Both the position numbers and the translations under genes were made by a program. DNA of 63,412 nucleotides, counting the filler, from Octopus bimaculoides (lineage: Eukaryota), in NCBI RefSeq assembly GCF_001194135.2. It is 10 parts of 7 records of this genome, joined end to end, with 100 filler letters (N's around TTAATTAATTAA, not from the genome) between each part and the next. Parts side by side here need not be neighbours in the genome. Positions count along the whole stretch, not along the records: positions 57,677 to 60,505 come from NC_068992.1; 9 more parts are not named here. One strand, given 5' to 3'. The notes beneath the pieces were generated by a model, which ran no database searches, had not been told where the DNA came from, and worked only from the letters and a program-made list of their open reading frames with translations. Shown here piece after piece: positions 57,577 through 60,699 of this stretch. Within the stretch, counting starts at the first letter, position 1. The number at the start of each line of letters is the position of its first letter.

Positions 57577-57728
57577 NNNNNNNNNNNNNNNNNNNNNNNN
57601 NNNNNNNNNNNNNNNNNNNNTTAATTAATTAANNNNNNNNNNNNNNNNNNNNNNNNNNNNNNNNNNNNNNNNNNNNTATATATATATAATCAAGGTGGCT
57701 AGTAGTAATTTAAATGCAGCAAGCAAAT

Positions 57729-58146
57729 AATTCACCGTCACTAAAATTGACAAAGGTGACGTGAGCACCAGCATTTCTAGAAATAAAAGCCGTAGACTTC
57801 TCAGTCACAAAAAGCAAATGGCCTCTTTGTATTACTGCTAGCTACCTTGATTATTTTATCATTTTTACATTGCCATTTTGTGAATTTAGTCACTCATTCC
57901 TACGGCATTCTTCATAATATTGAGAGGAGTGAGTTGGCCTCTACCAGTCGTGATGGAGTGAGTATTACTGATGAGTATTAAATTCCTATACGAAATTAGC
58001 ATACTAATCTAATGCATCTCTCTCACAGTGGGGAGGGTTTTCTCCCCTGTCAATACAAAGAGAACATGTGCTAATAAGTCTACAACTTCTATTTTTAGCA
58101 ATGCTGGTACTCCCGGCACCCTTGTCATTGTTAGTGACGGTGAATT
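57729..58146. repeat. ~100-bp imperfect inverted repeat (57729-57833 / 58052-58146) enclosing the hammerhead
   Basis: Terminal 16 bp are perfect (AATTCACCGTCACTAA / TTAGTGACGGTGAATT). About 14 mismatches over ~92 aligned bp by manual count, plus one 13-vs-3 nt internal loop. Confidence 0.9.
57962..58015 (+). ncRNA. Canonical type I hammerhead ribozyme
   Basis: GTATTA (I) CTGATGA, GTAT-TAAATTCCT-ATAC (II), GAAA, TTAG-CATA-CTAA (III), TC (AUC triplet), TAATGC (I). All core residues are present and all helices pair (one G.U). Confidence 0.9.
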
Positions 58147-58509
58147 TCAGAAACTAGCCTGGGGTAGTTAAATGGAGAGTAAGCATCAATATCAATTTCA
58201 TAGCAAGAAAGGTAGTTGTAAGATATATTTAGCAAGGAGAGATGCACACGTTAAGATATTCACACATACGCTCCGATGCGAGGCAACCTAGAATTCACTG
58301 GATAGAGGGATAAAATAGCGACGTTCAATTAATGATATCACACGAGAGAGTAAACGAACAACGATCTGAGTAGTGTAGATGTGTCCTGTATCTTGTATTT
58401 ATTTATAGCAGAGGACGTTTTCATTAATCTTGTCATTTTATTCATTTTATACGAACTTTAATATGTGTATATACATACAAACATACATAAATACATACAT
58501 ATATATCAT

Positions 58510-58815
58510 CATCATCATCGTCATCGCGATCATCATTATCCAGTGTTTTAAATCCGGGTTGTCCCCGTTAACAGGAGTGGCCGGTTCTACCTCAATGCCA
58601 TAGCAACTGAGGTAAGCAGGTGCAGCCCATTCTCCTTTGCTATCATGAGGCTTTTTTGGAGCTGGATTATCTACGGGGAGCATGCCCTTGCTAACCCCAA
58701 CCTCAGTTTCTTGGCATGAGGGGTCCCGAGAGCAAGGCCTCTACGACGTCTTTTGAGGAACGCGGTAGAAAACTAGCTCAGGAAAGCAGGGACGCTACTA
58801 CCTGAGAGGTGTACC
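58510..58815 (-). mobile_element. RTE-related SINE/non-autonomous element with (GAT)n tail
   Basis: Minus strand has GGTTGGGGTTAGCAAGGGCATGC..CCGTAGA and ends AACGGGGACAACCCGGATTTAAAACACTGGATAATGATGAT. Assignment is from remembered motif similarity only. Confidence 0.5.
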
Positions 58816-59546
58816 TAAATACATACATATACATATATATATATATATANNNNNNNNNNNNNNNNNNNNNNNNNNNNNNNNNNNNNNNNNNNNNNNNNNN
58901 NNNNNNNNNNNNNNNNNNNNNNNNNNNNNNNNNNNNNNNNNNNNNNNNNNNNNNNNNNNNNNNNNNNNNNNNNNNNNNNNNNNNNNNNNNNNNNNNNNNN
59001 NNNNNNNNNNNNNNNNNNNNNNNNNNNNNNNNNNNNNNNNNNNNNNNNNNNNNNNNNNNNNNNNNNNNNNNNNNNNNNNNNNNNNNNNNNNNNNNNNNNN
59101 NNNNNNNNNNNNNNNNNNNNNNNNNNNNNNNNNNNNNNNNNNNNNNNNNNNNNNNNNNNNNNNNNNNNNNNNNNNNNNNNNNNNNNNNNNNNNNNNNNNN
59201 NNNNNNNNNNNNNNNNNNNNNNNNNNNNNNNNNNNNNNNNNNNNNNNNNNNNNNNNNNNNNNNNNNNNNNNNNNNNNNNNNNNNNNNNNNNNNNNNNNNN
59301 NNNNNNNNNNNNNNNNNNNNNNNNNNNNNNNNNNNNNNNNNNNNNNNNNNNNNNNNNNNNNNNNNNNNNNNNNNNNNNNNNNNNNNNNNNNNNNNNNNNN
59401 NNNNNNNNNNNNNNNNNNNNNNNNNNNNNNNNNNNNNNNNNNNNNNNNNNNNNNNNNNNNNNNNNNNNNNNNNNNNNNNNNNNNNNNNNNNNNNNNNNNN
59501 NNNNNNNNNNNNNNNNNNNNNNNNATATATATATATATATATGTGA

Positions 59547-59582
<36 letters not shown>

Positions 59583-60699
59583 GTATAGTATAACATAGTC
59601 TTTGTGTACAGTCAGATATATGATGCTATCTGTGAGTTTAGGCCTCCGCGTAGATAATCCTCATCTTGTCTGCTTCCAGTATAATTGTGTTGTTATATAT
59701 AAATAACCACAATGTGGAAACATACGTTAGAAGGAAGTGATATAAAATTTTGCTAATCGTAATTTTTCCTTTTATATCTATACACAGAGATTCACACACA
59801 AACTCACAAACACGCAAACACACGCACATACTCACACACAAACTCACAAACGCGCAAACACACACTCAAGCACATGTTTACAGTTGTCTGTTTATAATCG
59901 TGCTTGCACTGTTCAAGCTGATCTAGCAATTTTATCGACACAAATTCAATGTTTAGATTTTACATTTTTTTTTTTTTTATATTTCCTGTTTTGCTTCTGT
60001 CCTTTTATGAAACTGAAAGAACGACAGATTGATAATGTCGTCATAGATAAAATATTTCTGGTTAAAACACGAATTAATCATAACAGACTGTTGGGTAAAC
60101 AGCAATATCGATAACTACGACGACGTCGACGAACCAACAACAAATTATAATACATTGGTACGGTGAAATTTTAGTTTTCATGCTGTGTATGGCTCTAATG
60201 AGAATTTGAACAGGATTCATTCAAACGTCAGTATTGATATAAGACTTTTCATTCGCAATCTCAGCTACAGATGTTATGTAGCTTCAGGCAACAATTTCCC
60301 TGAAAAACAGCAATTGCTATTTTACCCGGAGCCTAACAACTGCGAAGGTTAAAGAAACAGTGATCTCTTCAACATTTTTGTCATTTTCACAAGAACTTTC
60401 TTTCTATTACACACAGTAATTATTAGCCTAATTTCTATATATTTTCAACAAATACGCCTTTCGTATAATATTTATATTTAATAAGTGATGTGTGTGTGTG
60501 TGTGTNNNNNNNNNNNNNNNNNNNNNNNNNNNNNNNNNNNNNNNNNNNNTTAATTAATTAANNNNNNNNNNNNNNNNNNNNNNNNNNNNNNNNNNNNNNN
60601 NNNNNGCAACTCGAGGGGCTTCCGGTGGTGAAGTCCCCTGCGCATGCGCAGAATAGTACTTTCTCAATGGCGGCTATAATTTCGCACCACTACATGTAT

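What the first reader, a model, noticed from the sequence alone, without database searches (positions are those of the whole stretch)
57955..58015. Intact type I hammerhead ribozyme with a possible loop II pseudoknot, beside the C2H2-ZNF exon
Seen: every conserved hammerhead residue is present: CUGAUGA 57968-57974, G10.1-C11.1, GAAA 57992-57995, U16.1 and C17. Stem I has 6 bp, stem II 4 bp and stem III 4 bp; predicted cleavage is 3' of C58009 (AUC). Loop II AUUCC (57982-57986) can pair with GGAGU (57955-57959) just upstream of stem I. Known: loop II/stem I tertiary contacts give natural hammerheads activity at physiological Mg2+, and metazoan type I hammerheads are mostly tied to Penelope-like elements and retrozymes. 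Inference: the ribozyme is intact while its flanking inverted repeat has drifted by ~15%, which hints at selection or a young/active family. It is on the ZNF strand and could cut a ZNF-locus transcript, but a synthetic 100-nt scaffold join separates them, so distance and orientation are unproven.
Basis: partly seen in the sequence, partly recalled or inferred. Interest (0 to 1): 0.88.

Follow-up and report, generated by a model that had tools for sequence, protein, structure and literature searches.

The report
Hammerhead-like motif on a palindrome tip
The sequence does spell out a complete hammerhead-ribozyme consensus, but it lies exactly on the tip of a long inverted repeat. The repeat's own hairpin is predicted to out-compete the ribozyme fold by far, so this is an untested and probably weak or silent candidate.

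Summary
All conserved hammerhead core residues are at the stated coordinates. They are flanked by helix I (6 bp), helix II (4 bp) and helix III (4-5 bp) in type I order, with C17 at 58009. On a random-sequence model this is rare: about 3-5e-12 per site, or 4-6e-7 per 60-kb window.

The support stops there:
- **Weak helices.** Twelve of the 14 pairs are A-U or G-U.
- **No Rfam support.** Hammerhead_1 scores 10.6 bits against a threshold of 34, and that alignment is out of register.
- **Poor predicted folding.** The hammerhead fold is -1 to -2 kcal/mol against an MFE of -7.3 to -9.5. About 5e-5 of the ensemble holds all three helices, against 0.70 for a Schistosoma control.
- **A competing hairpin.** The motif sits on the apex of a ~420-bp imperfect palindrome (57729-58146, centre 57988/57989). 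That hairpin pairs the CUGAUGA box with the helix III 3' strand and C17.
- **The pseudoknot is not evidence.** A match that good arises by chance in 53-64% of trials.
- **The selection argument fails.** The apex has drifted as much as the arms.
- **No family context.** There is no tandem repeat, no Penelope-like ORF, and no relatives could be retrieved.
- **The ZNF link cannot be tested** within this piece.

Verdict: a plausible but unproven, probably weak or inactive, hammerhead candidate.

The parts
57962..57967 (+). Helix I, 5' strand (GUAUUA)
   Evidence: Pairs with 58010-58015: 6 bp, one of them G-U. It is also the innermost continuous part of the long palindrome stem.
57968..57974 (+). 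CUGAUGA box (C3-A9)
   Evidence: Exact match, and the only CTGANGA in the piece on either strand. In the competing rod hairpin G5, A6, U7 and A9 pair with 58009-58005, while C3-U4 are a 2-nt bulge.
57975..57991 (+). Helix II hairpin: GUAU / AUAC with 9-nt loop UAAAUUCCU (G10.1-C11.1 closing pair)
   Evidence: 4 bp, 3 of them A-U. The isolated hairpin has +0.9 kcal/mol. Equilibrium probability in context is below 1%.
57992..57995 (+). G12 A13 A14 A15.1 (GAAA box)
   Evidence: Exact match.
57995..58008 (+). Helix III hairpin: AUUA(G) / (C)UAAU, 4-5 bp, loop GCAUAC or CAUA
   Evidence: The 4-bp version has +2.1 kcal/mol and the 5-bp version appears. Equilibrium probability in context is 2e-4 to 2e-3. 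It is longer than the 1-2 bp helix III described for canonical metazoan type I motifs (PMC4209133).
58009..58009 (+). C17; predicted cleavage 3' of this base (triplet AUC 58007-58009)
   Evidence: The position follows from hammerhead numbering. Cleavage was not tested.
58010..58015 (+). Helix I, 3' strand (UAAUGC)
57955..57959 (+).
   Evidence: Complementarity is real, but matches this good occur in 53-64% of random or shuffled flanks. G57956-G57958 also pair with 58020-58022 in the helix I extension, where U57959 faces U58019 and G57955 is bulged. In the co-transcriptional snapshots the same AUUCC/GGAGU pairing is part of a nested hairpin that sequesters C11.1 and G12.
57900..57961 (.). Inner left arm of the palindrome
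   Evidence: Aligns with the reverse complement of 58016-58070. Together with the apex, 56 of 84 columns are identical, local score 21.5 against 9.0 +/- 1.9 in shuffles, with 0 of 2000 shuffles reaching it.
58016..58070 (.). Inner right arm of the palindrome
   Evidence: It holds a local G+C-rich hairpin, GGGGAG...CUCCCC, at 58030-58047.
57729..57809 (.). Outer left arm of the palindrome
   Evidence: Arms of 76-80 nt, 83-84% complementary to 58067-58146.
58067..58146 (.). Outer right arm of the palindrome
57834..57899 (.). Extra sequence in the left arm with no counterpart in the right arm (boundaries approximate)
   Evidence: In the global palindrome alignment these columns are gaps. It contains 57826-57854, which is complementary to 57686-57714 (29 nt, 86%).

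Best explanation
The locus is a ~420-bp imperfect DNA palindrome: a foldback-type inverted repeat at 57729-58146, centred at 57988/57989, with a 65-85 nt insertion in the left arm. It lies in A+T-rich, non-coding, repeat-rich DNA.

The 54 nt at its apex (57962-58015, + strand) match the complete type I hammerhead consensus. "Helix I" is simply the last stretch of the palindrome stem. The two halves of the catalytic core lie on opposite arms.

If the + strand is transcribed, the RNA is predicted to fold into the long rod hairpin. In that hairpin G5, A6, U7 and A9 pair with C17, U16.1 and the helix III 3' strand. G10.1 and the helix II 5' strand pair with AUAC at 58001-58004. The three-way hammerhead junction therefore has to be built from two marginal A-U helices against a much more stable competitor.

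I infer that self-cleavage 3' of C58009 is absent, or at best slow and partial, perhaps only transiently during transcription. I also infer that the motif is not a dedicated regulator of a neighbouring gene.

Shown:
- the motif
- the palindrome
- the energetic competition
- the lack of model or family support

Inferred:
- inactivity
- origin, which is either drift within the palindrome or a decayed solo copy of a hammerhead-bearing repeat
For: - The motif sits on the palindrome apex. Outer arms are 83-84% complementary. The inner arms plus apex are significant, with 0 of 2000 shuffles reaching the score.
- MFE structures of 66-, 101-, 171- and 418-nt contexts all show the rod, not the hammerhead (-9.5, -25.4, -48.1 and -152.2 kcal/mol).
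- The hammerhead fold is -1.0 to -2.0 kcal/mol. The fraction of the ensemble holding all three helices is 4e-5 to 3e-7. A Schistosoma type I control, written from memory, gives 0.70.
- In context, helix II has a probability below 1% and helix III 0.02-0.2%.
- Rfam gives no hit at E <= 10 on the whole piece. On 101 nt alone, Hammerhead_1 scores 10.6 bits against a gathering score of 34, in the wrong register. RAGATH-1-hammerhead scores 12.2 bits against 56.3.
- No archetypal internal loop follows the 6 bp of helix I. There is only a bulged A58016 and a U-U mismatch.
- There is no 150-450 bp tandem repeat and no second core box. There is no ORF with a Pfam match.
- Transition-type mismatches in the arms are A-C on the + strand 8 times and G-U 3 times. 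The minus strand folds better (-167.9 against -152.2 kcal/mol). So nothing suggests RNA-level maintenance of the + strand structure.
Against: - The full descriptor is very improbable in random sequence: 3-5e-12 per site and 4-6e-7 per window. The palindrome gives only helix I and U16.1-C17 for free. A purely fortuitous origin therefore needs a very large hidden search space.
- Helix I of 6 bp and helix II of 4 bp are exactly the canonical metazoan type I sizes (PMC4209133).
- Loop II begins UAAAU, which resembles my recollection of the Schistosoma loop CAAAUA.
- Metazoan genomes can carry thousands of real type I hammerheads in low-GC, highly self-paired repeats, some without archetypal tertiary contacts and with slow cleavage (mussel, PMC7229834).
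- Viroid-like RNAs are known to cleave from folds that are not their most stable ones.
- Nearest-neighbour energies ignore stabilisation of the hammerhead core by tertiary contacts and Mg2+.
Confidence: 0.55

Rival explanations
1. It is a genuine self-cleaving type I hammerhead belonging to a repeat family of the host: a solo unit related to non-LTR retrozymes or to the pseudo-LTRs of Penelope-like elements. The long imperfect hairpin would be the element's self-paired RNA. The ribozyme would cut 3' of C58009 during transcription, before the rod forms, as in viroid-like RNAs.
For: - All 15 core positions and three helices are in the correct order, with a random expectation of 4-6e-7 per window.
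- Helix sizes of 6 bp and 4 bp are canonical (PMC4209133).
- The 418-nt unit has 38.8% G+C and is highly self-paired, as described for metazoan retrozyme RNAs of about 170-400 nt (PMC7229834).
- Penelope-like elements often show inverted-repeat insertion structures and a bias for (TA)n targets (PMC8557442). The piece starts with (TA)5 at 57677-57686.
- A bulge and a mismatch 7-9 bp up helix I could serve as a docking site for loop II.
Against: - There is no tandem copy within 278 nt upstream or 840 nt downstream.
- There is no reverse transcriptase or GIY-YIG signal.
- It falls below every Rfam hammerhead threshold.
- Helix III is not the short palindromic type of canonical metazoan motifs.
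- The hammerhead fold is strongly disfavoured.
- The wobble asymmetry favours the opposite strand.
- No related sequence could be retrieved.
Confidence: 0.3
2. The functional unit, if any, is the long hairpin itself read from the minus strand: a hairpin-RNA or small-RNA source, or simply a foldback or MITE-like transposon. On this view the + strand hammerhead motif is irrelevant.
For: - The minus strand of 57729-58146 folds to -167.9 kcal/mol against -152.2 for the + strand.
- Six of the 7 transition-type mismatches in the outer arms are A-C on the + strand, which are G-U on the minus strand.
- The palindrome is highly significant.
Against: - The asymmetry rests on 11 sites (8 against 3) and is not significant.
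- No terminal target-site duplication was recognised by eye.
- No Rfam microRNA or other RNA family matches here. The mir-297 hits lie in microsatellites elsewhere in the piece.
- No expression data are available.
Confidence: 0.1

Closest known systems
Canonical metazoan type I hammerhead ribozymes (Schistosoma Sm-alpha, newt satellite 2, retrozyme hammerheads; Rfam RF00163)
   Same: - The same 15 core nucleotides, with C17.
- Type I topology.
- Helix I of 6 bp and helix II of 4 bp.
- A low-GC repeat context.
   Different: - Helix III is 4-5 bp with a non-palindromic loop, not 1-2 bp with a small palindromic loop.
- Loop II is 9 nt.
- There is no archetypal internal loop in helix I.
- Helices are almost all A-U.
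- Hammerhead_1 scores 10.6 bits against a gathering score of 34.
- The hammerhead fold is not the predicted stable fold, unlike the Schistosoma control.
Non-LTR retrozymes of animals (PMC7229834; bioRxiv 10.64898/2026.07.22.740005)
   Same: - A type I motif.
- A unit of about 400 nt.
- G+C below 45%.
- A highly self-paired predicted RNA.
   Different: - It is a single copy, not a tandem array of 150-450 bp units.
- The self-pairing is a DNA-level palindrome centred on the ribozyme.
- No circular RNA evidence is available.
Minimal hammerheads in pseudo-LTRs of Penelope-like elements (PMC4209133, PMC8557442)
   Same: - Type I.
- Low in vitro activity is common.
- These elements form inverted-repeat insertion structures and prefer microsatellite targets.
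   Different: - Those motifs lack or nearly lack helix III, have a long helix II (6-8 bp) and a short helix I, and come in pairs flanking an RT/EN ORF.
- None of this is seen here.
Hammerhead domains of viroids and viroid-like satellite RNAs (Avsunviroidae)
   Same: Core boxes that are base-paired in a more stable alternative structure, so that the ribozyme fold is transient. This comparison rests on established knowledge.
   Different: Those are replicating circular RNAs, often with ribozymes of both polarities. Here the sequence is genomic DNA, only the + strand carries the motif, and there is no evidence of circular RNA.

Membership tests
Hammerhead ribozyme (any type) | Conserved core: C3 U4 G5 A6 N7 G8 A9, G12 A13 A14, A15.1-U16.1, H17, and the usual G10.1-C11.1 pair | tested here: met
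   All positions are present at 57968-57975, 57991-57995 and 58008-58009.
Hammerhead ribozyme (any type) | Three helices around the core, here in type I order with helix I open | tested here: met
   Helix I has 6 bp, helix II 4 bp and helix III 4-5 bp. Twelve of the 14 pairs are A-U or G-U.
Hammerhead ribozyme (any type) | The hammerhead fold is attainable, i.e. stable or competitive among alternative folds | tested here: not met
   The hammerhead fold is -1.0 to -2.0 kcal/mol against an MFE of -7.3 to -9.5. The ensemble fraction is 5e-5 or less, against 0.70 for the Schistosoma control. This is prediction only. Tertiary and kinetic effects are not modelled.
Hammerhead ribozyme (any type) | Site-specific self-cleavage 3' of H17 | not testable with these tools
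   Needs in vitro transcription or RNA end mapping.
Rfam hammerhead families (RF00163 Hammerhead_1 and its clan CL00010; RAGATH-1-hammerhead) | Covariance-model score at or above the gathering threshold | tested here: not met
   No hit at E <= 10 on the 2.8-kb piece. On 101 nt, Hammerhead_1 scores 10.6 bits against 34, out of register, and RAGATH-1-hammerhead 12.2 against 56.3. No other hammerhead family was listed; only the best match per clan is kept.
Canonical metazoan type I hammerhead | Helix I of 6 bp and helix II of 4 bp (PMC4209133) | tested here: met
Canonical metazoan type I hammerhead | Helix III of 1-2 bp capped by a small palindromic loop (PMC4209133) | tested here: not met
   Helix III is 4-5 bp with loop GCAUAC or CAUA, which is not palindromic.
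Canonical metazoan type I hammerhead | Conserved loop 1 / loop 2 nucleotides for the tertiary contact | tested here: inconclusive
   No internal loop follows the 6 bp of helix I, only a bulged A58016 and a U57959-U58019 mismatch. Loop II is 9 nt. The proposed Watson-Crick pseudoknot is at chance level. The consensus loop nucleotides are shown only in figures that are not held.
Non-LTR retrozyme | Type I hammerhead inside tandem repeats of 150-450 bp (PMC7229834) | tested here: not met
   No direct or tandem repeat of that size, and no second core box, in 57677-58849. Only 278 nt upstream are available.
Non-LTR retrozyme | Low G+C (below 45-50%) and a highly self-paired RNA | tested here: met
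   G+C is 38.8% over 57729-58146. The MFE is -152.2 kcal/mol for 418 nt.
Penelope-like element pseudo-LTR hammerhead | Location in repeats flanking an RT / GIY-YIG ORF, usually as paired motifs | tested here: not met
   No ORF is longer than 78 aa and no Pfam family reaches its threshold. There is a single motif. Only 2.15 kb of real sequence is available.
Any repeat family carrying this motif | Other copies with conserved core and covarying helices | not testable with these tools
   No animal genome collection is on hand. Protein-level and DNA-pattern searches found nothing related.

The most novel reading that the evidence does not exclude
A bona fide self-cleaving type I hammerhead placed at the very tip of a long foldback RNA. 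A rod-to-hammerhead conformational switch, as in viroids, would gate cleavage. This would represent a so far undescribed hammerhead-bearing repeat family.
Probability: 0.15. Interest if true: 0.55.

Novelty: new member of a known kind. Interest (0 to 1): 0.3.

Why it matters
If active, it would add a lineage to the known spread of type I hammerheads in animals. In the held literature I found no report of a cephalopod hammerhead. It would also show a hammerhead arranged on a palindrome apex instead of in tandem repeats, which bears on how these ribozymes move and how their cleavage is held in check.

If inactive, it is a useful caution. A perfect core plus three nominal helices can look intact and still be out-competed by the local hairpin. 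Descriptor matches need folding, family and assay evidence.

Tried and rejected
Finding relatives (nothing useful):
1. Protein searches with the 61-aa stop-free frame across the left arm and motif, and with the 78-aa ORF of the neighbouring SINE-like insert, found no homologue.
2. Exact-product look-ups of the two longest ORFs found nothing on record.
3. DNA patterns of the conserved arm block and of the motif were scanned in metagenome and viral contigs. Only 10 metagenome hits came back, all limited to the 23-24 nt pattern itself, several of them from human-gut metagenome assemblies. I take them as chance.

As a result I could confirm neither copy number, nor conservation, nor even the source organism.

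Other checks that led nowhere:
- Rfam on the whole piece and on 101 nt gave nothing near threshold.
- The weak mir-297 and mir-3149 hits lie in microsatellites and were dismissed.
- Pfam on ten translated frames gave nothing, so there is no ZNF, RT or endonuclease in the piece.
- ARAGORN found no tRNA.
- One literature query was badly designed and uninformative.

Ideas considered and rejected:
- An assembly artefact as the source of the palindrome. The arms differ by 16-26% and by indels, which chimeric reads would not produce.
- The palindrome making a chance hammerhead likely. It supplies only helix I and U16.1-C17 for free, so it does not.

Full report
**Material.** Only 57677-60505 is real sequence, and it is broken by a 675-N gap at 58850-59524. 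That leaves 1173 + 981 bases at 36% G+C. No ORF exceeds 78 aa and none matches a Pfam family above threshold. The piece therefore holds no ZNF exon and no transposon protein. The source organism could not be verified.

The base-by-base check gave:
- CUGAUGA at 57968-57974
- G10.1 (57975) paired with C11.1 (57991)
- helix II GUAU/AUAC, with the 9-nt loop UAAAUUCCU
- GAAA at 57992-57995
- helix III AUUA/UAAU, extendable to 5 bp with tetraloop CAUA
- U16.1 at 58008 and C17 at 58009
- helix I at 57962-67 / 58010-15, 6 bp with one G-U

It is the only CUGANGA box on either strand of the piece, and GAAA follows at the right distance. Helix I of 6 bp and helix II of 4 bp are the sizes described as canonical for metazoan type I hammerheads. 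Helix III is not: the canonical form is 1-2 bp with a small palindromic loop (PMC4209133).

**Is it more than chance?** On a random-sequence model, yes.
- A descriptor no stricter than the candidate itself found nothing in 2 x 20 Mb of first- and second-order Markov sequence.
- The analytic value, checked stage by stage by Monte Carlo, is 3-5e-12 per site. That is 4-6e-7 per 60.5-kb window and 0.02-0.03 per 2.7-Gb genome.
- Even a very lenient descriptor gives only 1-2e-3 per window.
- I do not know how many windows the first stage read, and real repeat-rich DNA is not Markovian. These numbers are therefore a lower bound on the false-positive rate. They still mean the motif cannot be waved away as trivial.

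**What the databases say.**
- Rfam reports no hammerhead at E <= 10 on the piece.
- RAGATH-1-hammerhead reaches 12.2 bits against 56.3, in the right register.
- Per family, such scores are expected about once per 100 kb.
- The held literature has no report of a cephalopod hammerhead.

**What is really there: a palindrome.**
- The motif lies exactly on the apex of a long imperfect inverted repeat.
- The outer arms, 57729-57809 and 58067-58146, are 83-84% complementary.
- The inner arms plus apex, 57900-57988 and 57989-58070, share 56 of 84 columns. Their score is 21.5 against 9.0 +/- 1.9 in shuffles, and 0 of 2000 shuffles reach it.
- The left arm carries 65-85 extra bases (about 57834-57899) that include a second small inverted repeat with 57686-57714.
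- The symmetry centre is 57988/57989, inside helix II.
- "Helix I" is the last stretch of the palindrome stem.
- In the rod form G5-C17, A6-U16.1, U7-A, A9-U, G10.1-C58004 and the helix II 5' strand are all paired across the axis. C3-U4 is a bulge.

**Folding.**
- Every context tested (54, 66, 101, 171 and 418 nt) has the rod as its MFE. The energies are -7.3, -9.5, -25.4, -48.1 and -152.2 kcal/mol.
- The hammerhead fold scores -1.0 kcal/mol, or -2.0 with the 5-bp helix III.
- Helices II and III alone are +0.9 and +2.1 kcal/mol.
- Their equilibrium probabilities in context are below 1% and 0.02-0.2%.
- The fraction of the ensemble holding all three helices is 5e-5 for 54 nt and 3e-7 for 73 nt with the extended helix I.
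- The MFE of the 66-nt segment is no better than shuffles (z = -0.49).
- Nearest-neighbour energies ignore core tertiary structure, Mg2+ and kinetics. A weak or transient activity therefore cannot be excluded.

**The pseudoknot.**
- AUUCC/GGAGU is complementary, but a match of 5 or more pairs between this loop and 22 nt on either side of helix I appears in 53% of random flanks and 64% of shuffled flanks. There is also one in the downstream flank.
- Most of GGAGU (G57956-G57958) also pairs with 58020-58022 in the helix I extension. There U57959 faces U58019 and G57955 is bulged.
- In co-transcriptional snapshots the same AUUCC/GGAGU pairing appears in a nested hairpin, not a pseudoknot. That hairpin ties up C11.1 and G12 before the 3' half is made.
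- It is not evidence for a tertiary contact.
- After the 6 bp of helix I there is only a bulged A58016 and a U-U mismatch, not the internal loop of canonical type I motifs.

**The selection argument.**
- The apex is 21/25 complementary (84%), the outer arms 67/80 (84%) and the inner arms 39/53 (74%). The "ribozyme" has therefore drifted from palindromic symmetry as much as its flanks.
- Three of its four mismatches (G8-A58006, A57982-A15.1, C57986-C11.1), plus the CT indel (C3-U4), are exactly the asymmetries a hammerhead needs. That is true by construction and says nothing about selection without a second copy.
- Transition-type mismatches are A-C on the + strand 8 times and G-U 3 times. The minus strand folds better, at -167.9 against -152.2 kcal/mol.
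- If any RNA-level constraint exists, it points weakly to the strand without the motif.

**Family context.**
- There is no tandem or direct repeat of 150-450 bp, no second core box and no tRNA.
- The tandem criterion for non-LTR retrozymes is therefore not met in the 1.17 kb available.
- Low G+C (38.8%) and strong self-pairing do fit that family (PMC7229834).
- Penelope-like elements form inverted-repeat insertions and favour (TA)n targets (PMC8557442), and the piece starts with (TA)5. But their minimal hammerheads look different, and no RT/EN is present.
- Attempts to fetch relatives all failed.

**Weighing.** Two improbable readings compete.
- *Pure chance* is about 1e-6 per window, more if many windows were screened or if repeat structure helps.
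- *A real hammerhead lineage* has a high prior, because animal genomes hold thousands of such motifs. It must, however, absorb several oddities: failure of the covariance models, marginal helices, an atypical helix III, no tandem partner, placement on the symmetry centre of a DNA palindrome, and wobble asymmetry on the wrong strand.

I put about 0.55 on [quoted passage not shown]. I put 0.30 on "a genuine, at least weakly active, repeat-borne hammerhead". I put 0.10 on the hairpin itself, read from the minus strand, being the relevant feature.

The ZNF-regulation idea has no support inside this piece and cannot be tested here.

Noticed in passing
58504-58815 (- strand), flanks 58488-58503 and 58816-58831: A ~312-bp insert flanked by an exact 16-bp direct repeat, TAAATACATACATATA, which looks like a target-site duplication. 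Read on the minus strand it starts GGTACACCTCTCAGG... and ends in a (GAT)n tail (58505-58540). This resembles a SINE-type retroposon inserted in an (ATAC)n microsatellite. ARAGORN and Rfam found no tRNA or other RNA match, and the protein search found no homologue.
   Followed up: partly
57729-58146, both strands: The minus strand of the long palindrome is predicted to fold more stably than the plus strand (-167.9 against -152.2 kcal/mol). Six of the 7 transition-type mismatches in the outer arms are A-C on the + strand, which are G-U on the minus strand. The numbers are too small to be significant.
   Followed up: partly
57686-57714 and 57826-57854: A second inverted repeat (29 nt, 86%) encloses the outer left arm. 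Its right copy lies in the 65-85 nt that the left arm has in excess of the right arm. This could be a nested small MITE-like unit or a template-switch product.
   Followed up: no
58850-59524: An assembly gap of 675 N flanked by (AT)n/(ATAC)n on the left and (AT)n(TG)n on the right, so the gap falls in a microsatellite.
   Followed up: no
59792-59869 and 59542-59584: An imperfect CA-rich array (periods 8, 12 and 28; ACACACAA-like) is complementary to the (TG)n tract 250 nt upstream (39 nt, 79%). The Rfam mir-297 and mir-3149 matches in the piece lie in microsatellites of this kind and are far below threshold.
   Followed up: no
58030-58047: A local G+C-rich hairpin, GGGGAG-GGUUUU-CUCCCC, in the right inner arm. 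The left inner arm has a weaker counterpart (AGAGG...CCUCU, 57923-57942).
   Followed up: no
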